Shown: piece by piece, positions 1 through 62,514 of the stretch
Layout of the letters: every line of letters starts with the position of its first letter
Numbering within the stretch: the first letter of the stretch is position 1
Assembly (NCBI GenBank): GCA_965655095.1
Contig: OZ296657.1
Coordinates: 15,996,001 to 16,060,000 of the forward strand
Reading direction: 5' to 3'
Source: Haplodiscus bocki
Lineage: Eukaryota
Length of the DNA stretch: 64,000 bases
Position numbers and translations under genes: made by a program
Notes under the pieces: model-generated
Told to the model about the DNA's origin: nothing
Database searches by the model: none
What the model saw: only the letters and a program-made list of their open reading frames with translations

Positions 1-127
1 CATTGTCCACATGACTCCAACAAGAACATGTCCCAAGTTCACATGAGGCGAAGTACTCGACGAAACTCACAATCAAGATGAATGCAAAATCAACTGCTAA
101 CAATATTAGACCACGTAGAACAATATT

Positions 128-3100
128 GTCCTGTTAGTGTAACTTGCAGGTAGCAGAGCCCCTTCACCCCCCTCTAATAATATTCTTTTGGCGTTGAGAT
201 GACACGAAGACTTAAACGATACCCGCTTTTGAGGTGATTGCAAAATCAGCTGTCACCAATTTCGGTACATGCAGAACAAGGGTATACTGTTACCGTAACG
301 AACAGATTGCACAGCCCCTACTATCTAGTTACGAAAATTCGTTGGTCGTTCATATGACACGAAGCATTCAAAAAACTAGCTCTTACGAGGAAAGCGAAAG
401 AAACTGTTGAATCTCTCAGAACATGCAGAACAATGGTGTCCTGTTATGGTAACTTACAAGTAGCAGAGCCTTTGACAGCTCCAGAACAGTATTCCGTTCC
501 GTTCATACGACACGAAATATTCAACAATACCAGCACTTAAGGTGAACGCAAAACCAACTGTCAGAGTTTTCAGTACCAGCAGAAAAAATGGTGTCCTGTT
601 AGTTTATCTTACCGGTAGCACAGCTCCTGCAACCGAGCAAACATTATTAATTTACCGTTCAAATAACGCGAAGTATTCAAAGAAAATCCCTTTTCAGATG
701 AAACCAGAAAATCCTCTTTACAAATTTAGACCAATAATGTCCTGTTAGAGTAACCTACAGGTAGCAGAGCCCCTGCCCGCTCCCTAACAGTATTCCTTCG
801 GCGCTCAAACTACACGAAGCATTCAAAGATGCCCGCTCTTCAGGTGAAGACAAAACCAACTGTCAACATTTTGAATACATGTAGAACAATTGTGTCCTGT
901 TAGTTGAAAGTACAGAAAGGACAGCTCACGCCAGCTATTTACCAATATTCGTCTGTCGTTCATATGATACGAAGCATTCAACAAACTAGATCTTACGAGC
1001 GAGGCGGAAGAGATTGTTTAATCCCTCAAAACATGCAGAGCAATGGTGTCCTGTTAGTGTAACTTGCAGGTAGCAGAGCCCCTTCACACCCCTCTAATAA
1101 TATTCTTTTGGCGTTGAGATGACACGAAGACTTAAACGATACCCGCTTTTGAGGTGATTGCAAAATCAGCTTTCACCAATTTCGGTACATGCAGAACAAG
1201 GGTATACTGTTACCGTAACGAACAGATTGCACAGCCCCTACTATCTAGTTACGAAAATTCGTTGGTCGTTCATATGACACGAAGCATTCAAAAAACTAGC
1301 TCTTACGAGGAAAGCGAAAGAAACTGTTGAATCTCTCAGAACATGCAGAACAATGGTGTCCTGTTATGGTAACTTACAAGTAGCAGAGCCTTTGACAGCT
1401 CCAGAACAGTATTCCGTTCCGTTCATACGACACGAAAAATTCAACAATACCAGCACTTAAGGTGAACGCAAAACCAACTGTCAGAGTTTTCAGTACCAGC
1501 AGAAAAAATGGTGTCCTGTTAGTTTATCTTACCGGTAGCACAGCTCCTGCAACCGAGCAAACATTATTAATTTACCGTTCAAATAACGCGAAGTATTCAA
1601 AGAAAATCCCTTTTCAGATGAAACCAGAAAATCCTCTTTACAAATTTAGACCAATAATGTCCTGTTAGAGTAACCTACAGGTAGCAGAGCCCCTGCCCGC
1701 TCCCTAACAGTATTCCTTCGGCGCTCAAACTACACGAAGCATTCAAAGATGCCCGCTCTTCAGGTGAAGACAAAACCAACTGTCAACATTTTGAATACAT
1801 GTAGAACAATTGTGTCCTGTTAGTTGAAAGTACAGAAAGGACAGCTCACGCCAGCTATTTACCAATATTCGTCTGTCGCTCATATGATACGAAGCATTCA
1901 ACAAACTAGATCTTACGAGCGAGGCGGAAGAGATTGTTTAATCCCTCAAAACATGCAGAGCAATGGTGTCCTGTTAGTGTAACTTGCAGGTAGCAGAGCC
2001 CCTTCACCCCCTCTAATAATATTCTTTTGGCGTTGAGATGACACGAAGATTTAAACGATACCCGCTTTTGAGGTGATTGCAAAATCAGCTGTCACCAATT
2101 TCGGTACATGCAAAACAAGGGTATACTGTTACCGTAACGATCAGATTGCACAGCCCCTACTATCTAGTTACGAAAATTCGTTGGTCGTTCATGACACGAA
2201 GCATTCAAAAAACTAGCTCTTACGAAGAAAGCGAAAAAAACTGTTGAATCTCTCAGAACATGCAGAACAATGGTGTCCTGTTATGGTAACTTACAAGTAG
2301 CAGAGCCTTTGACAGCTCCAGAACAGTATTCCGTTCCGTTCATACGACACGAAAAATTCAACAATACCAGCACTTAAGGTGAACGCAAAACCAACTGTCA
2401 GAGTTTTCAGTACCAGCAGAAAAAATGGTGTCCTGTTAGTTTATCTTACCGGTAGCACAGCTCCTGCAACCGAGCAAACATTATTAATTTACCGTTCAAA
2501 TAACGCGAAGTATTCAAAGAAAATCCCTTTTCAGATGAAACCAGAAAATCCTCTTTACAAATTTAGACTAATAATGTCCTGTTAGAGTAACCTACAGGTA
2601 GCAGAGCCCCTGCCCGCTCCCTAACAGTATTCCTTCGGCGCTCAAACTACACGAAGCATTCAAAGATGCCCGCTCTTCAGGTGAAGACAAAACCAACTGT
2701 CAACATTTTGAATACATGTAGAACAATTGTGTCCTGTTAGTTGAAAGTACAGAAAGGACAGCTCACGCCAGCTATTTACCAATATTCGTCTGTCGCTCAT
2801 ATGATACGAAGCATTCAACAAACTAGATCTTACGAGCGAGGCGGAAGAGATTGTTTAATCCCTCAAAACATGCAGAGCAATGGTGTCCTGTTAGTGTAAC
2901 TTGCAGGTAGCAGAGCCCCTTCACCCCCTCTAATAATATTCTTTTGGCGTTGAGATGACACGAAGATTTAAACGATACCCGCTTTTGAGGTGATTGCAAA
3001 ATCAGCTGTCACCAATTTCGGTACATGCAAAACAAGGGTATACTGTTACCGTAACGATCAGATTGCACAGCCCCTACTATCTAGTTACGAAAATTCGTTG

Positions 3101-4718
3101 GTCGTTCATGACACGAAGCATTCAAAAAACTAGCTCTTACGAAGAAAGCGAAAAAAACTGTTGAATCTCTCAGAACATGCAGAACAATGGTGTCCTGTTA
3201 TGGTAACTTACAAGTAGCAGAGCCTTTGACAGCTCCAGAACAGTATTCCGTTCCGTTCATACGACACGAAATATTCAACAATACCAGCACTTAAGGTGAA
3301 CGCAAAACCAACTGTCAGAGTTTTCAGTACAAGCAGGAAAAATGGTGTCCTGTTAGTTTATCTTACCGGTAGCACAGCTCCTGCAACCGAGCAAACATTA
3401 TTAATTTACCGTTCAAATAACGCGAAGTATTCAAAGAAAATCCCTTTTCAGATGAAACCAGAAAATCCTCTTTACAAATTTAGACCAATAATGTCCTGTT
3501 AGAGTAACCTACAGGTAGCAGAGCCCCTGCCCGCTCCCTAACAGTATTCCTTCGGCGCTCAAACTACACGAAGCATTCAAAAATGCCCGCTCTTTAGGTG
3601 AAGACAAAACCAACTGTCAACATTTTGAATACATGTAGAACAATTGTGTCCTGTTAGTTGAAAGTACAGAAAGGACAGCTCACGCCAGCTATTTACCAAT
3701 ATTCGTCTGTCGTTCATATGACACGAAGCATTCAACAAACTAGATCTTACGAGCGAGGCGGAAGAGATTGTTTAATCCCTCAAAACATGCAGAGCAATGG
3801 AGTCCTGTTAGTGTAACTTGCAGGTAGCAGAGCCCCTTCACACCCCTCTAATAATATTCTTTTGGCGTTGAGATGACACGAAGATTTAAACGATACCCGC
3901 TTTTGAGGTGATTGCAAAATCAGCTGTCACCAATTTCGGTACAGGCAGAACAAGGGTATACTGTTACCGTAACGATCAGATTGCACAGCCCCTACTATCT
4001 AGTTACGAAAATTCGTTGGTCGTTCATGACACGAAGCATTCAAAAAACTAGCTCTTACGAAGAAAGCGAAAAAAACTGTTGAATCTCTCAGACCATGCAG
4101 AAAATGGTGTCCTGTTATGGTAACTTACAAGTAGCAGAGCCTTTGACAGCTCCAGAACAGTATTCCGTTCCGTTCATACGACACGAAATATTCAACAATA
4201 CCAGCACTTAAGGTGAGCGCAAAACCAACTGTCAGAGTTTTCAGTACAAGCAGAAAAAATGGTGTCCTGTTAGTTTATCTTACCGGTAGCACAGCTCCTG
4301 CAACCGAGCAAACATTATTAATTTACCGTTCAAATAACGCGAAGTATTCAAAGAAAATCCCTTTTCAGATGAAACCAGAAAATCCTCTTTACAAATTTAG
4401 ACCAATAATGTCCTGTTAGAGTAACCTACAGTTAGCAGAGCCCCTGCCCGCTCCCTAACAGTATTCCTTCGGCGCTCAAACTACACGAAGCATTCAAAGA
4501 TGCCCGCTCTTCAGGTGAAGACAAAACCAACTGTCAACATTTTGAATACATGTAGAACAATTGTGTCCTGTTAGTTGAAAGTACAGAAAGGACAGCTCAC
4601 GCCAGCTATTTACCAATATTCGTCTGTCGTTCATATGACACGAAGCATTCAACAAACTAGATCTCACGAGCGAGGCGGAAGAAATTGTTTAATCCCTCAA
4701 AACATGCAGAACAATGGT
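128..4718. repeat. Five tandem copies of a 6-monomer HOR (920, 920, 917, 917, 917 bp)
   Basis: Unit starts at 128, 1048, 1968, 2885 and 3802. The same spurious 68-aa ORF recurs at 542, 1462, 2379, 3296 and 4213 with only 0-1 aa differences. Confidence 0.95.
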
Positions 4719-5627
4719 GTCCTGTTATGGTAACTTACAAGTAGCAGAGCCTTTGACAGCTCCAGAACAGTATTCCTTTGGCATTCATATGACAGGAAGT
4801 ATTCACGATACCCGTTCAAAAGGTAAACGCAAAATCAACTGTCAACTTTTTCAGTACAAGTCAAACAATTGTGTCCTGTTCGTTTATATTACTGAAAGCA
4901 CAGCTCATGCCAACTAGCTAACAACATTCGTTTGCCGTTCATATGACACAATGTATTCAGAGGAAGTATCCCTTAAAAAGATAATCAATTCCTAAAGATT
5001 TCAGATCACATAGAACAAGGGAGTCCAGTTAGTGTAACATACAGGTAGGACGGCCCCTGACTGCTACCTAACAAAAGTCCTTTGCGTTCATATGGCACGA
5101 AGTATTCAGAAACACTCGCCCATAAGAAGCACAAGAAAGCAATTGTTAGCAATATAAGTACATGCAGAATAAGTGTATACTGTTACAGGTACAGCGCATA
5201 CCAGGTAGTGAAGAGTATTCTGTTGGCGTTCACAGGACACGAATAATTGAAAGATACCCACTCTTAAAAAGAACGCGATATCAAATGTCAAAATTTCGAG
5301 ACCACGTATAAAAATGGTGTCCTGTTAGTGTAACTTACAGGTAGCAGAGACTCTGCCAGCTCCCGAACCGTATTTTCTCTGCGTTCAGTTGACACGAAGT
5401 ATTCAAGAAAACCCGCTCCTAAGGTGAACGCAAAATCATTTGTCAACTTTTTCATGACATGTGGAACAATTGTGTCCTGCTAGTTTCAATTACATGTAGC
5501 AGAGCTCCTGCCAGCTAGTTATCAAAGTTCGTTTGCCGTTCATATGGCACGATATAATCAAAGATACCCGCTCCTAAGGTGAACACAAAACCAACTGTCA
5601 ACATTTTCAGTATATGTAGAAAACATT

Positions 5628-7425
5628 GTCCACATGACTCCAACAAGAACATGTCCAAAGTTCACATGAGGCGAAGTACTCGACGAAACTCACAATCAAG
5701 ATGAATGCAAAATCAACTGCTAACAATATTAGACCACGTAGAACAATATTGTCCTGTTAGTGTAACTTGCAGGTAGCAGAGCCCCTTCACACCCCTCTAA
5801 TAATAATCTTTTGGCGTTGAGATGACACGAAGACTTAAACGATACCCGCTTTTGAGGTGATTGCAAAATCAGCTGTCACCAATTTCGGTACATGCAGAAC
5901 AAGGGTATACTGTTAGCGTAACGAACAGATTGCACAGCCCCTACTATCTAGTTACGAAAATTCGTTGGTCGTTCATATGACACGAAGCATTCAAAAAACT
6001 AGCTCTTACGAGGCAAGCGAAAGAAACTGTTGAATCTCTCAGAACATGCAGAACAATGGTGTCCTGTTATGGTAACTTACAAGTAGCAGAGCCTTTGACA
6101 GCTCCAGAACAGTATTCCGTTCCGTTCATACGACACGAAATATTCAACAATACCAGCACTTAAGGTGAACGCAAAACCAACTGTCAGAGTTTTCAGTACA
6201 AGCAGAAAAAATGGTGTCCTGTTAGTTTATCTTACCGGTAGCACAGCTCCTGCAACCGAGCAAACATTATTTAATTTACCGTTCAAATAACGCGAAGTAT
6301 TCAAAGAAAATCCCTTCTCAGATGAAACCAGAAAATCCTCTTTACAAATTTAGACCAATAATGTCTTGTTAGAGTAACCTACTGGTAGCAGAGCCCCTGC
6401 CCGCTCGGTAACAGTATTCCTTCGGCGCTCAAACTACACGAAGTATTCAAAGATGCCCGCTCTTCAGGTGAAGACAAAACCAACTGTCAACATTTTGAAT
6501 ACATGTAGAACAATTGTGTCCTGTTAGTTGAAAGTACAGATAGGACAGCTCACGCCAGCTATTTACCAATATTCGTCTGTCGTTCATATGACACGAAGCA
6601 TTCAACAAACTAGATCTCACGAGCGAGGCGGAAGAAATTGTTTAATCCCTCAAAACATGCAGAGCAATGGTGTCCTGTTAGTGTAACTTACAAGTAGCAG
6701 AGCCTTTGACAGCTCCAGAACAGTATTCCTTTGGCATTCATATGACAGGAAGTATTCACGATACCCGTTCATAAGATGAAAGCAAAATCAACTGTCAACT
6801 TTTTCAGTACAAGTCAAACAATTGTGTCCTGTTCGTTTATATTACTGAAAGCACAGCTCATGCCAACTAGCTAAAAACATTCGTTTGCCGTTCATATGAC
6901 ACAATGTATTCAGAGGAAGTATCCCTTAAAAAGATAATCAATTCTTAAAGATTTCAGATCACATAGAACAAGGGAGTCCAGTTAGTGTAACATACAGGTA
7001 GGACGGCCCCTGACTGCTACCTAACAAAAGTCCTTTGCGTTCATATGGCACGAAGTATTCAGAAACACTCGCCCATAAGAAGCACATGAAAGCAATTGTT
7101 AGCAATATAAGTACATGCAGAATAAGTGTATACTGTTACAGGTACAGCGCATACCAGGTAGTGAAGAGTATTCTGTTGGCGTTCACAGCACACGAATAAT
7201 TGAAAGATACCCACTCTTGAAAAGAACGCGATATCAAATGTTAAAATTTCGAGACCACGTATATAAATGGTGTCCTGTTAGTGTAACTTACAGGTAGCAG
7301 AGACTCTGCCAGCTCCCGAACCGTATTCTCTCTGCGTTCATATGACACGAAGTATTCAAAGATACCCGCTCCTAAGGTGAACACAAAACCAACTGTCATC
7401 ATTTCCAGTATATGTAGAAAACATT
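5628..7425. repeat. One complete 1798-bp 12-monomer HOR that contains the 6-mer as a sub-block
   Basis: The short monomer GTCCACATGACTCCAACAAGAACATGTCC occurs at 5, 5628 and 7426. Between 5628 and 7426 lie one 6-mer block plus further monomer types also seen at 4719-5470 and 7857-8600. Confidence 0.9.
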
Positions 7426-8882
7426 GTCCACATGACTCCAACAAGAACATGTCCAAAGTTCACATGAGGTGAAGTACTCGACGAAACTCACAATCAAGAT
7501 GAATGCAAAATCAACTGCTAAGAATATTAGACCTCGTAGAACAATATTGTCCTGTTAGTGTAACTTGCAGGTAGCAGAGCCCCTTCACCCCCCTCTAATA
7601 ATATTCTTTTGGCGTTGAGATGACACGAAGATTTAAACGATACCCGCTTTTGAGGTGATTGCAAAATCAGCTGTCACCAATTTCGGTACATGCAGAACAA
7701 GGGTATACTGTTACCGTAACGATCAGATTGCACAGCCCTTACTATCTAGTTACGAAAATTCGTTGGTCGTTCATGACACGAAGCATTCAAAAAACTAGCT
7801 CTTACGAAGAAAGCGAAAGAAACTGTTGAATCTCTCAGAACATGCAGAACAAGGGTGTCCTGTTATGGTAACTTACAAGTAGCAGAGCCTTTGACAGCTC
7901 CAGAACAGTATTCCTTTGGTATTCGTATGACAGGAAGTGTTCACGATACCCGTTCATAAGGTGAACGCAAAATCAACTGTCAACTTTTTCAGTACAAGTC
8001 AAACAATTGTGTCCTGTTCGTTTATATTACTGAAAGCACAGCTCATGCCAACTAGCTAACAACATTCGTTTGCCGTTCGTATGACACAATGTATTCAGAG
8101 GAAGTGTCCCTTAAAATGATAATCAATTCTTAAAGATTTCAGATCACATAGAACAAGGGAGTCCAGTTAGTGTAACATACAGGTAGGACGGCCCCTGACT
8201 GCTACCTAACAAAAGTCCTTTGCGTTCATATGGCACGAAGTATTCAGAAACACTCGCCCATAAGAAGCACATGAAAGCAATTGTTAGCAATATAAGTACA
8301 TGCAGAATAAGTGTATACTGTTACAGGTACAGCGCATACCAGGTAGTGAAGAGTATTCTGTTGGCGTTCACAGGACACGAAACATTGAAAGATACCCACT
8401 CTCAAAAAAAACGCGAAATCAACTGTTAAAATATCGAGACCACGTATATGAATGGTGTCCTGCTAGTGTAACCTACAGGTAGCAGAGACTCTGTCAGCTC
8501 TCGAACCGTATTCTCTCTGCGTTCATATGACACGAAGTATTCAACGATACCTGCTCTAAAGGTGAACGCAAGATCAACTGTCACCATTCTCAGTACATGT
8601 AAAACAATTGTTTCCTGTTAGTTTAAATAACAGGTAGCATAGGTCCTGCCAGCGAGCTAATTTTATTCTTTTAGCGTTCATATGACGCGAAGTATTCAAA
8701 GAAACTCGCTCTCAAGACGAACGCAAAATCAAATATTAACAATTCAAGACCACGTAGAACAATGGTGTCCTGTTAGTGTAACTTACAGGTAGCAGAGACC
8801 CTGTCAGCTCCCTAACAGCATTTTCTGGCGTTCATAAGACACAAAAAATTCAACGATACCCGCTCTTAAGATGAACGCAAAA

Positions 8883-9158
8883 TCAACTGTCATTATTTTC
8901 AGTACGTCCAATGTTGCAACTGTAATCAAATTCTTTGCCGGTATAAAAGCATACTGCTCCAGCAGCATCATGTATTATTGCATGTAGTTTGAAAACAATG
9001 GAGCTGCAAAACACATCATCCAAGTTCGAGTCTCCATAACCAATGATTTCAACAAATGGAAACTTTTGGTCCATGTTACGTGAAGAGATTCTATCGTTCC
9101 AACAGTAACTTGCACTGACAAATATGTTTCTGCGAGCACTGATTTGTTCATGAGACAA
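8883..9158 (-). pseudogene. Small ORF with LHAIIHDAAG motif (possible phospholipase-A2-like His-Asp domain), 3' end truncated by the satellite
   Basis: ORF track 91 aa ...IIGYGDSNLDDVFCSSIVFKLHAIIHDAAGAV... The last codons and the stop lie inside the terminal satellite monomer. The PLA2 assignment rests only on the HD dyad and on PLA2-like genes being known in Polinton-type viruses. Confidence 0.4.
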
Positions 9159-9649
9159 TCTTTGACTATTGTTTCAATTATGAACCATTTTCATCAATAA
9201 CAATGCACTGCTTGAAAAGCTTATAAATGTAATTCAATAGATAAACTCGCTTTGCAACGAGCTCGTGGTATAGTCAAATTTCTGACCGATTTTATCATCT
9301 TTGAGGTACGATAATTTCCGTAACGGTACACGACAATGTTCAACTTGTCTATCAGTCTTGAATATTACACATACCTTTCTCCTACCATTATATACTGCTC
9401 AATTTAGGCAAAAAATTCCTCTTTGGGATCAGTCTTTTCAATGTCTGGTGATCATTGCATTTCGACTGGCGTCAATATTACTTTTTCGAGAGTTTTTGGA
9501 GTTGTTAGTACAATATGATTAAGTGCCAAATATGAATTTAGCTGGAGAAAGAATTTTCTATCTCCAAAGTTGCAACTCATCCTGACAGTAAAAGAAAAGA
9601 AATTGATAAAGTAAAAAGTTGCAACTACTTTTTTCAGGACCAAACAACT

Positions 9650-10225
9650 GAATTGCTTAGCAATACCTTGATCATATACAAAATCCATATACAGAACAAC
9701 TAGATATCTAAAAAAGCTTAAATGAATACGATTTCTATGTGAATTAAAAACAAGTTTATATTTCACATAAAGTATGTCGAAAATTCTAACTCATTCTCTC
9801 TTGTAGAAAATTGGACTTCAGAATATGAAATCTCCGGCGAGTCCACGCTGTTTCGCAGCTGAGTCGCACAAATTTTTCGGTTTGGACGATCCACAACGTC
9901 AACCACTTTGGGAGCCAGTTTCTTTTGATATAATTGTCATCTGAACGGGAGACAAGTTTTCCTCCCGGCTAAAGTTTTCTGTTGCAACAACTAGCTGATT
10001 TTGTAGTCTCATAAATTGTTTGAAGCCTGCTTCTCCCATTTAAGGAGTTTTTACCAGTCAAAAATCCTAGTCAACATCTTTCGTGAAGACTTAGAGTTTG
10101 ATATCCAACGAACCAAAGTCACCTTTGGAACAAGAAAAGCGTTCAAAAATGTCTGTGAATTTTCCAAAGCTAGCCGGTTCAAGTTAGCTTGTCCAAGGAA
10201 GGAGTAGTTTTGTAAGCCAATGGTT
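9650..10225 (-). pseudogene. Frameshifted gene of the Polinton-like element, possibly PC4-like ssDNA-binding protein
   Basis: Stitched translation ...SLDIKLxVFTKDVDxDFxLVKTPxMGEAGFKQFMRLQNQLVVATENFSREENLSPV...KVVDVVDRPNRKICATQLR... A beta-strands-then-helix pattern appears twice. Homologous copy at ~48980-49510. Confidence 0.45.
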
Positions 10226-11699
10226 TTGATCATTGAGACAGCACGCTAGTAGCTGAGAAAGTCATCTGTTATAACAGAAGGGAAGTTAAGGAATGATCAT
10301 GGAGCTGCAAGTTGTTGCTGATATACGCTTCCGCATACCTTATTTGGTCAAGCTTACGTGTTATTTCAATTGAAGGAGACTTTTTTCTTTCAGGTCATTG
10401 GATCGACTTTCTCTAAAAATGAAAACCTCCTGCCTTTTTCAGTACGCTTGTAGGAAAAAAACGAAAAACTCTGCTTTTCAGGTTCATTTGTTCAGAAAAC
10501 CTCTTCAACAATCAAAAGGTTAGTGATAAGATGCAAGTAATTACCAGTTTTTACAATGGGAGAAGTTGAGAAAACAGCCTTTTCCATTAACTAAATATAT
10601 ACAAAAAACACATGGTATGTAAAGGAAACTGCATTGCCGACCACGACAAGACGTGCTTTCTACACAATTGCAGATATCACACTACAATAGAAGGATACAT
10701 TGAAGAGTTGCTAGAGAAACTGAATGGAATCTGCATCAAGTACCAGCACAAGAGCTATCTAAACAAACTCTTTGAGCATCGGTTCAGTAACAAAATGATT
10801 GACAAGAGGGGATAAATGTTTGATAGCAGACAGCAATCTACTTTAATCAAAGGGAGAGGAATGGACAGAATGCCCAGCAGTGCAATAGAGACTCTTAAGG
10901 AAAAGTTAAAACAGCACTTATTGAGCTCATTCGGAAGACAAAGTCAACGCAAACATAACAAATAGTGTCAGCAGAAAGATCTCAAAAGTCAAGAAGAAAA
11001 ACTTGAATTCGAGCTGATCAATATTGCAGATTCTTTCCTAGATGGTTACGGTAATTAAGATAAATAACTTTTTTACCCTAAAGAATAAACTCCATATAAA
11101 ATAATCATTCTTTGAATCCCAAAGAGACCTGTAAATATCAAGTGGTACTGCCCGTGAAAAGCCACCACACCCAGCAACAGTCCCACAACACTAAAGAATC
11201 TACCAAACAAACACTCTCTCGATCATTAAGAAGAAAAAAAAGAAGGAACATTCATCGCTGTTTCCTTCTATAATTGGCACTTTTATTTCTGTTCCGTACC
11301 AAGACTCCGCCAGATATCTTCCCACATCAAATCTGACTGACGGATAGATTCTGTGTACCTGTAAATGGCTGTTGCTCAAGTTTTCTTATCGCTCCGAGAC
11401 AACAATGAAGACAATGGATGGAAACTTACTTCAAAAGCCCACTATGTCATTTTGGGAGTGTTGCATTTTGGTAAACAATGTTGTTACAATTTATGCTCCA
11501 CAGGGATTTGTCTAGAGTTTCGGAAAAATTTCTCATGATTCAAAAAGAAACTTGTTCCGCACTGCTAAGGGGATATTTGGCAACACAAGATTATGATACT
11601 TTACTTCAGCGCAAACAGCGTCTTTTATGTCTGCTCTGTAGAGCAAGCAGTTTTTGAAACTGGCAAAAGCAATGATTGTTCACCCACAACCTGAGAAAC

Positions 11700-18896: not shown

Positions 18897-21881
18897 TTAA
18901 ATTGTGTACCAACGTTGTTGCTTTTCGGCCTGCTGTTCCACTGCGCGCTTCTGTCCAACAGCCAGCGCCGCATGTATCTTCTTATTGGCCAACTCTAATT
19001 CTTTATTTTTCACGTTTTCTCGATCCAGTTCTTTCTTCTGCCAATCTTCGCTCAACCCAGTCGCTTGGAAGAATTGGTTCCTAAAATTCATCAAAACAGG
19101 CTTCATCGCGGCTTAGATATTGGATAGTCATATAATTGATAGTCATAATCTAAGTTGATCGAAAGTGAACTATTTAGCATGCACCCGAAAGTGAAAATAG
19201 ACGTTCACACGCTATCCGATATTAGAGGGAAAGAACAAATTTCACATCCGGCAAGTCTCAACAGGCCAAGAATAGCCAAAGTCGGCGCCGCCCACATGCA
19301 TCACAAAATACTCATCGGACCGAGTTGATTTTGGTGGTGTTTGAAAAAATGTATTTTGGTATAACTTTTGGTATGAAATGTAAGAAAACATAGCTTATGC
19401 TGGGATTCGAAACCGCTACTTGTCGATTTGGTAGATGTATGGTATATTTTCCCGTATAAAATGTTTAAAAAAGTAGCCTAAGCAGGGGTTTTGGACTCCT
19501 TTTGTCCTGCCCACTAGGCCACGGAGATATATCATGAGCTCCAGGCAAACTCTGTAAAGGTGAATTGATTCGAAAGGAGGTCCGTTGTCTCACGAAAGAA
19601 AAACAGTAATAGTCGGCATCTTTATTTCATAAAGCGCGACTAAAACTAGGCTTAAATACTTTTGTTAATCGAACCGAAACGCATTGTCACCTTAAACTGT
19701 TTTTATTACTCCCCTGTAATCCAGACTTGCAAAAAAGAGCATTAAAAATTTCGCGCTTGAATCTTCCAAAAATCGCCCTCAAGAAGTGTGTTCTGGCATT
19801 TATAAACCATTTTCTCAAATTTCAAAGAGATCATTTCGAAAAAATAAATAGCTCCCCAACCTTTGGTCGATCTGATCGAATCTATTGAGGCTGGGCATTG
19901 GCTGCGCAACCACCTTCACAGGGGTCAAACTAGCTGAAGCCACGTTGAAAGGCGCTACTACAGATGCGAACTGTGGAGGTACTTTTAGCTGCTGTGGTTG
20001 ACCAACTGAAGCTCCTGGCACCACTGCTCCAGCCGGAGAATGGAATTTATTTACTCCGTTCAGGTGGTCAAATTTCGGAAGAACAGAGGGCGGAATCAGT
20101 GGCAACATGTTATCTAAATAAAGTTTCATGAGCGAACACTTGCAATCAGTTTTTGTAGATACAGAAGTTGAAAAAACTTGACTTGAGGACAGGGATTAGT
20201 TCTGTAAATATTTTGAAGGAATCTATTGCCCAATTCAAATTTTATACCAAATATCTATCATAAAGTTTTGCTTTGCACCGTATATAAGCATTTTCTATAA
20301 TTATTCGTCCGGTTTTTCAGACGATGTATACTTTTATAATATAAAGTAAAGTAGTATACTTTTATATTAGCTCGGATTTAAAAATTATATGATTCAAAAC
20401 TCATTGAAGTTGACCGTTCCTGAAATCAACAAGGCCGAGAGCTTGAAAATCGTCGTCAGAAGTTCGATAGGTTAGACGAAAAAGTCAATAAAACAGAAAT
20501 CATTTCCAGAAGACTTCCTGTTGTAGGATGAAACCAAAGGAAGCAAGAAAGTAAAACTTACTCGGACTTGGGGTGATAAATGAAGGTATGATAGGCAATC
20601 TGTGAGGTGCTCCAGGAGGAAAAGCGGGAAGTGCTTGCGATGGAAACGGTGGAACAGGAAATCTCTGCTGCTGTTGTTTGGGCAATTCATGAAATTTAGA
20701 CCTTAGTTGATTCTCATTTGCAGGCGTTATCCACGAGTTTGACATTTCGTTTCCATTAACTGGCCCCAAAAAACTTTCCAAACCAAACCGGGGTGGCAGC
20801 TGATTACCATAACTCCGTTTAATTTCAGAGTTTCCATTTGGTTGAAATGGGATAGAAACTGCGCCATTCAGCTGGTTACCAAATCCAGAACTCCGCAATT
20901 CAGCTGCAACACATACTTGAATACTTGGCAAATGAAAAGTATTTTGCTTGTGAATGACAGATTTTAATTCAACAATCTCACCCACAGAAAAGCTAACACA
21001 CAAATAAATCAGGGAAGTTTCTCAAAAAAAATAACTGTTCGCGTGAGAATATCTGACCACTTCCAATTGGGTTTTGGCCAATTATTAGAGATTGGTGAGC
21101 ATAAGAAAACGCTACAGCAGCAATTTATCCACGTTGTTTTACTAACGTGAATAGAAACGGTGAAGATCGTAGTTTCATTACTGAAGAATGCTTCAGAGGT
21201 GACGAACCTAGCATTCACTAACCAAACTTTCGATTTTTTTAAAAACAAACCTGGAGGAGCTCTCTCCATGAATGATGAAGGGTTAGCACCTGCTTCATGA
21301 ACTGGGCTGCCAGGTATAATAGGAGTTGGCTTGGCTGGTTCGTCAGTTTTATCAAACAATATGGGAACCCCTTCATCGTCCGACAGTACCTCTTCAGGCG
21401 ATAAGGGTTGTTTCAATTCATTATTATCCAAATTTTGTGTGTTTGAATCGACTATTTCAGCGTCGGACTTGACTTCCTCACCATCGTTATTATTACTCAA
21501 GCAATGCTTCTTGTAGTAGTTCTTGATAAACTTAGTACTGCCGTCAGTGTAGTAGTGGCCGTTATTCTTGTAATAAATTTTCTGAAACTCGTAGTACAAG
21601 TTCTCCCATTTTTTCTTAGCTTCCTTGTCGTCATACTCTGTGCCTGAATCTTCACTGGATGACACAGATTTCCGCCGATATTTATATTTCTTCTTGGACT
21701 TTCGCTTCTTCTTTTTTGCCTTCTTAATACGCAATTTCTCATCTTCATCGGGTGAATCATCAACGGTCGCAATTTCTGCCTGAATGGCTGTATCCGATGT
21801 TGTCTCTTCTTTTGTATCTAGAGGCAAGCTGTTCTCCGTGATAAATACGGATTCATCATCATTCAGAACAGCGGCACTCAT
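18897..21881 (-). CDS. Spliced host gene, uncharacterised low-complexity protein (~469 aa). Exons 21881-21251, 20903-20562, 20113-19861, 19080-18897
   Basis: Donors CAG|GTTTGT, CGA|GTAAGT, AAG|GTTGGG and acceptors TTGCAG, ATTTAG, TTTTAG have matching phases (1,1,2). The exon total is 1410 nt, or 470 codons. The protein has an acidic N-terminus, a basic NLS-like run (KKAKKKKRKSKKKYKYRRK), a Pro/Gln-rich middle and a predicted coiled-coil C-terminus. Extra micro-exons between 21250 and 20904 cannot be excluded. Confidence 0.75.
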
Positions 21882-60527: not shown

Positions 60528-61035
60528 ATGGCTAAAGCACCTCCAATAACGAAGGAAGAGAAGAAACTTTTCGATTTGGCGAGCAAAGGATTGTGTCAAG
60601 AGTTTGTTGATTCTCTGAATAGATTTCTTACTCGACCGAGAAGGTGAGAACTTTTCAGCGTATGGCATTTGCCCTTCAAGAAACGACAGAGATAACGTTT
60701 ATACATTAGAATGTCTCCACTTCAGAGCTTCCATATCCAACATCAATGTTCAAAACGAGAGTGAACGAGGAAGAACACTTCTTCATTTTGCCGCTAAAAA
60801 TGGTGATAGGTTGTGGCTTCCACCATTAACATTCATGACTTCATTTTTACCTCTCGAATTTTTTGTTTTTACTTTCTTTCTTAGGTTGATGGTCCAACAT
60901 TTGCTAAACAACGGAGCCAGTGGTGAGATCTGTGATAAAGACAATTTTCTGCCTTTGCATGTGGCAGTATGGGGCGGGCATCGGGATGTTGCAAGAATTC
61001 TTCTAGAAAAGTTTCCCGAAGTTATTAATGCACGA
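60528..61035 (+). CDS. Ankyrin-repeat protein, first three coding exons (60528-60643, 60726-60809, 60885-61035); continues downstream
   Basis: Spliced translation MAKAPPITKEEKKLFDLASKG...INVQNESERGRTLLHFAAKNGDRLMVQHLLNNGASGEICDKDNFLPLHVAVWGGHRDVARILLEKFPEVINAR contains two canonical ankyrin repeats. The 82- and 75-nt GT-AG introns are in matching phase 2, and a donor GTATGT follows at 61036. Confidence 0.9.
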
Positions 61036-62514
61036 GTATGTATCGAAATTATTCCCGCGTTGGGAAATTATTCCCAACTATCCAAGCGCTCGTGCTGGCT
61101 CATAAATCTTCATAATTCCCTTCTGTTCTCAGATCCATTTGGAGAAAAGCGAACCTCGATTTCTCCCAAATTTATTTTTGAGTCATTTGCATTTAGTAAA
61201 AGATTTCATTTTTTAAAGTAAATGTATAAATTTCATCGATTTTTGAAACGAAAGTGTCAGTTAAGGAGCAAGTTACGAAATTGATTTGCGCGATGAATTC
61301 ACTTCGAATTGCGCTGAAAATCACAGTGCCAAAAGTTCAAAATATTAAAAGGTCAAAACCTTCATTTTTGTATGTTAATTTGTTTCGTTTCGGCGCTCTG
61401 CAAAGTCGATTATTTATCAGCGAGCGAACCTGAAAGACTAAAAGACGTCTAGACAAGTTTAATCAAATACATTTTCTGATACTAGTAGGGTAGAATGACA
61501 TTCAAACTGCTATTTTCATCAATTCTGTTTAGACTGCAGATGGATCCGGTATATTGCATTACTGTTTGAGTGGAAAAAACTTTGAAGAGGAGGACGTCCT
61601 GTTTTTCATCAATGTGAGTAATCTCAAACTGTGATCTCGGAGGATTCCTTTCCATTAGAGGTGTAGATTTTAAGATGATAATCAAATGCTAAAAGCCTAC
61701 GTACTTTGGACCTATTGCACCCAATGAGGGGTATAAAGACTGAAGTGCAAGCATTGAACACAAAAAATGCAGCAGGAAAATGTGAATCAAGACAATTGAC
61801 GGATAGGATTGAATACTTATCAGATCGACTCCTGATTATCTCGCTGTGCTAGAGATCGATTAACCAACAACTTTTTACAATACACTAAAACATTCGAGCA
61901 GTGCGAGCTGGATATAATGGAACAGACGCTTAGAATATACATTTCGCGTGAAGAATATTCCATCCAAGATCTGAGCGGCGTTTGGTGGACTAACAGTGAG
62001 CATTTTTGAAGTGAAAAAATGAATTAGGAATCTACGAATAAGGATATAAAACACGGATCAGACAAAAATATGTTTTAAAATTCATCGTCTGAAAGAAGAC
62101 GTAAATTAAATAGACATCACCACACTGAAAAAAAATATTAAACTAAGGGGGACCGTGCATATCGGTATGTCAAGCAACTTATATATGATGACTAGCATAG
62201 ACCTGAGGTAGGCTCAAAAAGTATATGATCTATGAGAAGAGGGCATATTTCTGGGAAATGTGAAAAAGAATCTACAATGTCATAGAGAAGAGTTCCAAGG
62301 TGGGGGTCGTTGATATGCAGCATGCTGTAGCTCTCCTGTACAGTGTCATTGCACAACCCCCTTGTTTATATAAAATAAGTTTAGGGAAATAGTTTAGTGC
62401 ATCGTATGAGAATTTTGAAGCCTTCAAATTTCATGAATTTGCGCTTGGAATTACGGCATTCCCTCTTCTATGACAGCTTTAATCAAGATTTCTACTGGTT
62501 CGCTCTTCTTCTTT

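What the first reader, a model, noticed from the sequence alone, without database searches (positions are those of the whole stretch)
1..8905. Nested higher-order satellite whose expansion and deletion history can be read directly
Seen: labelling monomer types by their starts gives M (ABCDEF)x5 GHIJKL M ABCDEF GHIJK M AB GHIJK N O. A 12/13-mer HOR therefore contains a 6-mer that has been amplified five times, a variant lacking L (K/L fusion at ~7272-7425) and a variant lacking CDEF (B joined to G at ~7857). Unique, more consensus-like monomers N and O sit at the outer edge. Established: ~155-170-bp monomers, homogeneous HORs inside and monomeric repeats at the border are the architecture of primate alpha satellite and other centromeric satellites. 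Inference: this may be the edge of an uncharacterised centromeric or pericentromeric HOR array in a non-model animal.
Basis: partly seen in the sequence, partly recalled or inferred. Interest (0 to 1): 0.7.

Follow-up and report, generated by a model that had tools for sequence, protein, structure and literature searches.

The report
Edge of a single-locus nested satellite
The first 8.9 kb of the window is the right-hand end of one 223-kb block of non-coding ~155-bp tandem repeats whose copying and deletion history can be read from hybrid repeat units. This is a well-known kind of DNA, and nothing here shows that it acts as a centromere.

Summary
Observation confirmed.

- **Five-fold 6-mer:** four identical hybrid monomers show that one unequal exchange founded it.
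- **Variant lacking L:** an exact 155-bp in-register deletion.
- **Variant lacking CDEF:** a crossover between two paralogous monomers that are 89% alike. The same block was lost a second time upstream, at a different breakpoint.

The window holds only the edge. The main array is C10:15,781,598-16,004,906, 223 kb on a 92-Mb contig, and the 99 kb read is a mosaic of repeat units of up to 33 monomers.

Two conserved monomer motifs occur 396 and 731 times in the 1.5-Gb assembly. None is on the reverse strand, and all but one fit this array, so the family is single-locus.

The array is non-coding and gave no tRNA, Rfam or conserved-fold signal. It ends mid-monomer against a truncated old dispersed repeat, with no decayed monomers beyond.

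The other is unique and the most consensus-like.

A centromere role is neither shown nor excluded. I found no CENP-B box, no AT-richness and no sharing between chromosomes. The scan has already reported similar nested satellites of other monomer families in this genome.

The parts
1..35 (+). Tail of an M monomer cut by the window start. The array continues upstream for 214 kb.
   Evidence: The string of monomer types across the window start reads ...HIJKLM|ABCDEF. Every 5-kb bin of the 90 kb upstream is full of monomers.
36..956 (+). 6-mer copy 1 (A B C D E F), the parental copy.
   Evidence: Its BCDEF block differs by 4-5 of 766 positions from the nearest three upstream 13-mer copies and by 2 from copy 2.
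957..4627 (+). 6-mer copies 2-5 (G B C D E F, four times). Each starts with hybrid monomer G, at 957-1111, 1877-2030, 2794-2947 and 3711-3865.
   Evidence: G is N-type over its first ~105 bp and A-type after. The switch lies inside the shared conserved core and is the same in all four. The BCDEF blocks of all five 6-mer copies differ by 2-14 of 766 positions.
4628..5658 (+). N H I J K L M, the second half of the 13-mer HOR. The N monomer carries a short C-type patch.
   Evidence: The diagnostic sites of N at 4628 read nnnnnnnnnnncccnnn, which suggests gene conversion.
5659..7456 (+). 12-mer variant A BCDEF N HIJK M. It lacks L, and the joint lies at 7335-7360.
   Evidence: Alignment with K-L-M copies shows an exact 155-bp in-register gap. 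The first ~22 bp of the remaining monomer mix L- and M-type letters. The matching 1798-bp period appears.
7457..8519 (+). Last unit A B C' H I J K. It lacks CDEF, and hybrid monomer C' lies at 7768-7919.
   Evidence: C' is C-type at 14 diagnostic sites and N-type at the last 3. It also carries the 2-bp deletion typical of 6-mer copies 3-4. Its HIJK block is the most diverged, with 19-25 of 600 positions differing.
8520..8674 (+). It belongs to an upstream HOR variant and is not unique.
   Evidence: It is 97-98% identical to the O monomers at C10:15979508, 15983422 and 15987336, which sit in HIJK-O-~-^-!-LM units.
8675..8828 (+). It is unique and the most consensus-like monomer of the 99 kb analysed.
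   Evidence: Its best match to any other monomer is 86%. It is 89% identical to the consensus, against a mean of 78%.
8829..8905 (+). Partial monomer Q (about the first 77 positions). The array ends here.
   Evidence: No monomer-like sequence is found in 8907-64000, even with filters off and E up to 10.
8905..11177 (.). Truncated copy of an old dispersed repeat that abuts the array.
   Evidence: The genome search returned 5449 candidates, and the copies on other contigs are about 68% identical. Three copies align from exactly window 8905 and stay homologous to each other beyond that point, so the window's copy is cut internally. Pfam gave no match for its reading frames.

Best explanation
Window 1-8905 is the right-hand end of a single-locus, one-orientation, non-coding satellite array. 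The main block is C10:15,781,598-16,004,906, about 223 kb or roughly 1,450 monomers of ~155 bp. The array grows and shrinks by in-register unequal homologous exchange between different monomers, probably between sister chromatids or homologues, with some gene conversion.

Shown here:
- Monomer types are 60-85% alike, while copies of a multi-monomer unit are 97-100% alike.
- One exchange between monomer N (after F) and monomer A (before B) created hybrid monomer G and a duplicated 6-mer. Further exchanges between 6-mer copies raised the count to five.
- An exchange between L and M removed exactly one monomer.
- Exchanges between the paralogous monomers C and N removed CDEF at least twice, with different breakpoints.
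- The G and L/M breakpoints fall in the best-conserved blocks of the monomer.
- Copies near the edge are more diverged than interior ones.

Inferred: the array is ordinary satellite DNA, probably heterochromatic, with no sequence-specific function. Its pattern is the neutral outcome of recombination outrunning mutation, with the array edge taking less part in that exchange.
For: - **Decomposition and string of types:**
- **Hybrid monomers and breakpoints:**
- **Identity gradient:** interior HIJK blocks of the same unit type differ by 0-2 of 600 positions, and the last three by 11-25. Nearest-neighbour identity is 0.995-1.000 in interior bins of the right-hand domain and 0.966 in the last bin.
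- **Extent:**
- **Single locus:** a 31-mer core with up to 3 mismatches occurs 396 times forward, 0 reverse and 0 in the control. A 25-mer 5' block occurs 731 times forward and 0 reverse, with one hit on C2. The counts are fully accounted for by the density in this array. The best 150 profile matches in the genome all lie in the array.
- **Non-coding, not an RNA gene:** no reading frame above 71 aa, no tRNA, no Rfam match at E up to 1, and no consensus fold over 70 monomer types.
- **Copy number roughly right:** contig k-mer depth is 7.6-8.2 times that of the unique flank in two of the three runs of sample S1 (X1, X4). The mean 31-mer multiplicity in the assembled array is 7.6-7.9.
- **Matches the published definition:** HOR satellites and unequal-crossover models, PMC8122249.
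Against: - No long reads were available, so the exact number of 6-mer copies and the three perfectly identical 26-mer copies upstream rest on the assembly alone.
- I saw only 99 kb plus samples of the 223 kb.
- 'No function' is an inference from absence of signals. Chromatin, transcription and CenH3 were not testable, and no RNA run was on record.
- Run X3 gave a lower depth ratio (about 5) and sample S2 a higher one (5-20). The tool warns that contig depth is not a copy number.
Confidence: 0.8

Rival explanations
1. The array is the centromere, or part of the pericentromere, of the chromosome represented by contig C10. It would be a chromosome-private HOR satellite that carries CenH3 nucleosomes.
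For: - The monomer is near nucleosome length and has HOR architecture.
- The array size of 223 kb is compatible with a regional centromere.
- A second large satellite (51-bp family) lies about 308 kb further right on the same contig, according to an unchecked scan note.
- The best-conserved part of the monomer is an imperfect 9-bp dyad. Dyad symmetry is reported for some centromeric satellites (own knowledge).
Against: - The family is not shared with any other contig.
- GC is 40.6% against 37.7% in the flank, so the array is not AT-rich, and there is no CENP-B-box core.
- The boundary is abrupt, with no layers of decayed monomers.
- The dyad shows no compensatory changes beyond shuffles.
- The genome holds many other HOR satellites, so any one array has a low prior.
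- No chromatin data were available.
Confidence: 0.13
2. The array is the overgrown internal tandem repeat of a transposable element, as earlier scan notes report for other satellites of this genome.
For: - The right edge abuts a dispersed repeat with thousands of candidate copies.
- A foreign insertion of about 1.85 kb sits inside the array at C10:15,800,280.
- Scan notes describe transposon-derived 158-bp and 177-bp arrays elsewhere in this genome.
Against: - Other copies of the flanking repeat carry no monomers. They continue with their own sequence past the point where the window's copy is cut.
- The left flank of the array is unrelated to the right flank.
- No dispersed or reverse-strand monomer copies exist at up to 3 mismatches in a 25-mer and a 31-mer.
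- Very diverged short copies would escape these patterns.
Confidence: 0.05
3. The fine structure (five 6-mer copies, identical 26-mer copies) is partly an assembly artefact.
For: - The three 26-mer copies show 0 differences over the blocks compared.
- No long reads could be laid, and the short contigs are fragmented with holes over some joints.
Against: - The 6-mer copies differ from one another by 2-14 positions in a nested pattern, which is not what a collapse or a duplication error gives.
- Contig depth ratios in two runs of the likely source sample match the assembled k-mer multiplicity.
- The C' hybrid region is covered by contigs in all four runs.
Confidence: 0.07
4. The array is a tandem array of small-RNA genes, like the tRNA-Ile, U14 and 7SL arrays noted elsewhere in this genome.
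For: The period is similar to that of the ~164-bp tRNA-Ile array in a scan note. The monomer has conserved blocks.
Against: - ARAGORN found no tRNA gene in the 108 kb scanned.
- No Rfam match in 59.5 kb at permissive thresholds.
- RNAalifold predicts no pairs over 70 monomer types.
Confidence: 0.01

Closest known systems
Primate alpha satellite higher-order repeats
   Same: - Head-to-tail monomers of near-nucleosome length.
- Monomers within a unit about 60-85% alike, and units 97-100% alike.
- Variant units made by in-register unequal exchange that leaves hybrid monomers.
- Less homogenised copies at the array edge.
- An underlying alternation of two monomer classes: in the 16-type order, monomers two apart are 71% alike and neighbours 66% alike, and only 2 of 20,000 permutations reach this.
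   Different: - The monomer is 155 bp, not 171 bp, and has no CENP-B-box core.
- One locus of 223 kb in the whole genome, instead of megabase arrays on every chromosome.
- Only two to three divergent monomers at the edge, rather than long monomeric layers.
- The youngest amplification sits 4-9 kb from the edge.
- No centromere evidence.
- Sequence homology to alpha satellite was deliberately not tested, so no human sequence was used.
Interstitial or chromosome-specific HOR satellites of non-primate animals (beetles, nematodes, rodents, cattle; own knowledge and PMC8122249)
   Same: A species- or chromosome-specific satellite with multimeric units, evolving by unequal crossover and conversion, with no demonstrated function.
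   Different: Here the array is strictly single-locus, and the part read is a mosaic of several unit lengths, up to 33 monomers. The host is a little-studied marine invertebrate. Scan notes disagree between coral and acoel, and I did not determine it.
Other HOR satellites noted by this scan in the same genome (175, 172, 177, 167, 158 and 51-bp families)
   Same: The same architecture, and the same verdict that nothing shows centromere function.
   Different: A different monomer family. This one has young, sharply readable events with hybrid monomers at 97-100% identity, whereas several of the others are described as old and eroded. I did not compare the sequences.

Membership tests
Higher-order-repeat (HOR) satellite DNA | Long head-to-tail array of monomers of nearly constant length in one orientation | tested here: met
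   59 monomers in the window and 651 in 99 kb, modal length 155 bp, all on the + strand. There are 0 reverse-strand motif matches genome-wide.
Higher-order-repeat (HOR) satellite DNA | Monomers within a unit are much more diverged than successive units are from each other | tested here: met
   Monomer types are 51-89% alike. Units differ by 0-4%. This matches the definition in PMC8122249.
Higher-order-repeat (HOR) satellite DNA | Variant units explained by in-register unequal exchange (hybrid monomers at the joints) | tested here: met
   G is an N/A hybrid, C' is a C/N hybrid, and there is an L/M joint with an exact 155-bp loss.
Primate alpha satellite (as a sequence family) | ~171-bp monomer with a CENP-B box in a subset of monomers | tested here: not met
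   The monomer is 155 bp. The CENP-B core pattern occurs 0 times on either strand in 99 kb. Direct sequence comparison was not run.
Centromeric satellite | Occupied by CenH3/CENP-A and located at the primary constriction | not testable with these tools
   No chromatin or cytogenetic data. The four runs found are of unrecorded kind, served only as Logan contigs, and come from one study.
Centromeric satellite | Usual but not universal: the same family forms the main array on most or all chromosomes | tested here: not met
   All 396 and 730 of 731 motif matches, and the best 150 profile matches, lie in one array on C10.
Tandem array of small-RNA genes | The monomer contains a recognisable tRNA, snRNA, snoRNA or 7SL gene, or a conserved fold | tested here: not met
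Transposon-derived satellite (expanded internal repeat) | Short clusters of the same monomer inside dispersed copies of an element, and the array flanked by the two arms of that element | tested here: inconclusive
   No dispersed monomers at the tested stringency. Copies of the right-flank repeat lack monomers, and the left and right flanks are unrelated. Very diverged copies were not searched exhaustively, because only the best 150 of about 625,000 rough candidates were scored.

The most novel reading that the evidence does not exclude
The array is the functional, chromosome-private centromere of C10. This would be an animal in which each chromosome carries its own unrelated HOR satellite, which would explain the many different HOR families that the scan has noted in this genome. 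The young 6-mer and 26-mer amplifications would then mark ongoing centromere turnover.
Probability: 0.12. Interest if true: 0.6.

Novelty: new member of a known kind. Interest (0 to 1): 0.3.

Why it matters
The locus is a clean, small, fully readable example of how nested higher-order repeats arise:
- one founding exchange followed by step-wise amplification;
- recurrent loss of the same block through a pair of paralogous monomers;
- breakpoints in the conserved blocks;
- weaker homogenisation at the array edge.

It could serve as a teaching case or as a test case for HOR-decomposition software outside primates. It does not open a new question. HOR satellites and their unequal-crossover dynamics are well established, and the scan has already met several in this genome. 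It would matter more only if CenH3 mapping showed that it is a chromosome-private centromere.

Tried and rejected
1. **TRF with its 500-bp period limit** saw only the last 3.5 monomers. I replaced it with a profile-based decomposition.
2. **Small-RNA gene origin**, prompted by scan notes on tRNA, U14 and 7SL arrays: ARAGORN, Rfam and RNAalifold were all negative.
3. **Functional hairpin in the conserved core:** the imperfect dyad is real, with 70% of cells paired against 27-53% when slid. Pairing equals the shuffled expectation, so there is no covariation.
4. **Transposon-derived origin:** no dispersed monomers were found. The flank repeat is merely truncated by the array, and the left and right flanks are unrelated.
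5. **Edge as an old copy of the upstream order:** I asked whether K-O-P-Q is an old copy of K-O-~-^. P is only second-closest to '~' (82%) and Q is not close to '^' (75%, rank 32), so this stays unresolved.
6. **Two-class clustering** of monomer types by average linkage gave no clean split. The dimer signal shows only in the lag and permutation tests.
7. **Fetching the remaining 124 kb of the array:** I located the left end through pattern-search loci instead.
8. **Long-read check of the five copies:** only Logan contigs exist for the four runs.
9. **Pfam on flank and insertion reading frames:** nothing except an ankyrin repeat at 60811-61221.
10. **Literature searches** for cnidarian or coral HOR or centromere satellites returned nothing specific.
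11. **Organism identity** was not determined. Scan notes disagree between coral and acoel.

Full report

Yes. A profile built from seven monomers finds 59 consecutive matches in window 36-8914. All lie on the + strand, with E-values from 1e-16 to 1e-42. The remaining 55 kb has none, even with filters off and E up to 10. Shared 12-mers pile up at distances of 917/920, 1953, 1798 and 1185 bp.

Clustering the monomers at 90% identity gives this string:

[M tail] A BCDEF (G BCDEF)x4 N HIJKL M | A BCDEF N HIJK M | A B C' HIJK | O P Q

**2. What the joints show**

- **The 6-mer.** Copies 2-5 each begin with monomer G. G is N-type over about 105 bp and A-type after. The switch lies inside the shared conserved core and is the same in all four. 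One N-by-A unequal exchange therefore founded the duplication, and later in-register exchanges between 6-mer copies raised the number to five. The BCDEF blocks of the five copies differ by 2-14 of 766 positions in a nested pattern. Copy 1 is closest to the nearest upstream 13-mers.
- **The variant lacking L.** It has an exact 155-bp in-register gap. The first ~22 bp of the remaining monomer mix L- and M-type letters at 7335-7360.
- **The variant lacking CDEF.** It carries C' (7768-7919). C' is C-type at 14 diagnostic sites and N-type at the last three, and it has the 2-bp deletion typical of 6-mer copies 3-4.
- **C and N.** These are the only closely paralogous pair of monomer types, at 89% identity.
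- **A second, independent loss.** Upstream 'A B N H' units are also C/N hybrids, but their breakpoint lies at alignment columns 68-73 rather than 102-151. CDEF was therefore lost at least twice independently.
- **Conversion.** The N monomer at 4628 carries a C-type patch, which suggests gene conversion.

**3. The window holds only the edge**

The window is G000:C10:15,996,001-16,060,000, on a 92.28-Mb contig of a 1.5-Gb assembly.

- All 90 kb upstream is packed with monomers, about 33 per 5 kb.
- Samples show the array at 15.85 Mb and none at 15.70 Mb or further left.
- The main array starts at 15,781,598.
- A detached block of six monomers lies at 15,770,943-15,771,850.
- A foreign insertion of about 1.85 kb sits at 15,800,280.

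The main block is thus 223.3 kb, roughly 1,450 monomers.

In the 99 kb I could read there are 650 monomers of 76 types at 10% divergence. They are arranged as a mosaic of HOR domains:
- 11- to 16-mer variants on the left;
- a 33-mer repeated about three times;
- short units of about six and nine monomer types between the 33-mer and the right-hand domain;
- a 26-mer repeated three times, reading N HIJK O ~ ^ ! L M A B + C D E F N HIJK L M A B;
- four 13-mers;
- then the window.

Motif spacings further left, of 770 and 3074 bp, suggest more HORs there.

**4. The edge**

It is part of a HOR variant.
- P (8675-8828) is unique, with a best match of 86%. It is the most consensus-like monomer of all, at 89% against a mean of 78%.
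- Q is a 77-bp stump.
- Interior HIJK blocks of the same unit type differ by 0-2 of 600 positions. The last three copies differ by 11-25, and the terminal one differs most. The edge is therefore less homogenised, as unequal-crossover models predict.
- The young 6-mer amplification nevertheless sits only 4-9 kb from the edge.
- At 8905/8906 the array meets an old dispersed repeat. The genome search returned 5449 candidates, and the copies are about 68% alike. Three other copies align from exactly that base and continue past it, homologous to each other. The window's copy is therefore cut internally.
- The left flank of the array is unrelated to the right flank.

**5. How widespread is the family?**

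It is single-locus.

| Test | Forward | Reverse | Control | Where |
|---|---|---|---|---|
| Conserved 31-mer, up to 3 mismatches | 396 | 0 | 0 | All fit the C10 array |
| 5' 25-mer, up to 3 mismatches | 731 | 0 | 0 | One on C2, the rest fit the C10 array |
| Sequence-only covariance model of 70 types, best 150 matches | 150 | 0 | n/a | All in the C10 array |

- **31-mer.** The first 100 places lie in C10:15.77-15.83 Mb and 185 lie in my 99 kb. The remaining 111 match the expected density of the unseen 71 kb.
- **25-mer.** The 290 matches left over for the unseen 85 kb give 3.40 per kb, against 3.44 per kb in the part I read.

**6. Independent data**

Four runs hold the sequence. They come from two samples of one study, the organism is coded, and they are available only as Logan contigs. 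No RNA run is on record.

| Source | Figure for the HOR segments |
|---|---|
| X1 and X4 (sample S1), contig depth relative to the unique flank | 7.6-8.2 |
| X3 (sample S1) | about 5 |
| X2 (sample S2) | about 5-20 |
| Mean 31-mer multiplicity in the assembled array | 7.6-7.9 |

The tool warns that contig depth is not a copy number, so I take this only as rough support. It suggests that the assembly neither collapsed nor inflated this HOR, and it hints at copy-number variation between individuals. The five-copy count itself needs spanning long reads, which were not available.

**7. What it is not**

- It does not code for protein. No reading frame exceeds 71 aa.
- It gave no tRNA or Rfam match, and 70 monomer types share no consensus fold. 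I ran this test because scan notes report tRNA-Ile, U14 and 7SL arrays posing as satellites in this genome.
- The best-conserved stretch is an imperfect 9-bp dyad with a 3-nt spacer. Its pairing equals the shuffled expectation, so nothing indicates that it is maintained as a structure.

**8. An extra layer**

In the 16-type order A B C D E F N H I J K O ~ ^ ! L, monomers an even number of steps apart are 71.3% alike. Those an odd number apart are 65.7% alike. Only 2 of 20,000 permutations reach this difference. An old two-class (dimeric) alternation therefore underlies the right-hand HOR. The signal is weak in the left-hand domain.

**9. Centromere?**

*In favour:*
- near-nucleosome monomer length and HOR architecture;
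- a 223-kb array, a size compatible with a regional centromere;
- another large satellite about 308 kb away, according to an unchecked scan note.

*Giving no support:*
- a private, single-locus family;
- GC of 40.6% against 37.7% in the flank, CpG observed/expected of 0.87 against 0.84, and no CENP-B-box core;
- an abrupt edge with no layers of decayed monomers;
- an ankyrin-type exon about 52 kb away;
- many other HOR satellites in the same genome.

Chromosome-private centromeric satellites exist in other organisms (own knowledge), so the idea is not excluded. I put it at about 0.13.

**10. Verdict**

The HOR interpretation is correct, and the centromere inference remains untested. This is a new member of a well-known kind, and the scan has already reported similar nested satellites of other monomer families in this genome. 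Interest is modest. The locus is a very clean worked example of HOR evolution, with a recurrent deletion through one paralogous monomer pair.

Noticed in passing
L019:280-2000 (C10:15,800,280-15,802,158): A foreign insertion of about 1.85 kb interrupts the satellite. It carries two minus-strand reading frames of 259 and 206 aa with no Pfam match. Its left joint reads ...GGGTGACCACTCAAAGC..., which recalls the GACCACC joint that other scan notes give for Helitron-like chains in this genome.
   Followed up: partly
L043:1177-1437 minus strand (C10:~15,781,300-15,781,570), just left of the array: An 86-aa reading frame starts about 30 bp from the first monomer. It has a Gly/Arg-rich N-terminal part and no Pfam match. 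It may be an exon or a transposon remnant.
   Followed up: partly
L038:1115-2023 (C10:15,770,943-15,771,850): A detached block of six monomers lies about 10 kb left of the main array. The sequence just after it begins TGTCCACATG, the same 10-mer that starts the odd non-monomer tail of monomer M (window 4-13 and 5625-5634). M may have captured a piece of old flank.
   Followed up: no
window 8953-8988: Contigs of all four runs break here with several different continuations. This stretch of the flanking dispersed repeat is therefore shared with many other loci.
   Followed up: no
window 60811-61221 (+): A reading frame with an ankyrin-repeat match (Ank_5, E = 1.6e-6). It is probably an exon of a host gene, about 52 kb from the array edge.
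   Followed up: partly
window 21009-21881 (-): A 290-aa reading frame rich in Lys, Ser, Asp and Glu with no Pfam match. It may be a real exon of a low-complexity nuclear protein.
   Followed up: partly
C10:15,978,900-15,990,000 (L009, L012): The three copies of the 26-monomer (3.9-kb) unit are letter-identical over the BCDEF blocks compared. Their HIJK and AB blocks differ by at most one position. This points to a very recent triplication or to a place where the assembly should be checked.
   Followed up: partly
Runs X1/X3/X4 (sample S1) versus X2 (sample S2), window 4137-7306: Satellite-to-flank contig depth is about 8 in runs X1 and X4 of S1, about 5 in X3, and about 5-20 in S2. This may reflect copy-number polymorphism of this HOR between individuals.
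   Followed up: partly
Scan notes for this genome: Earlier notes disagree on the organism. Several say probable coral, and one says clearly an acoel worm. I did not resolve this.
   Followed up: no
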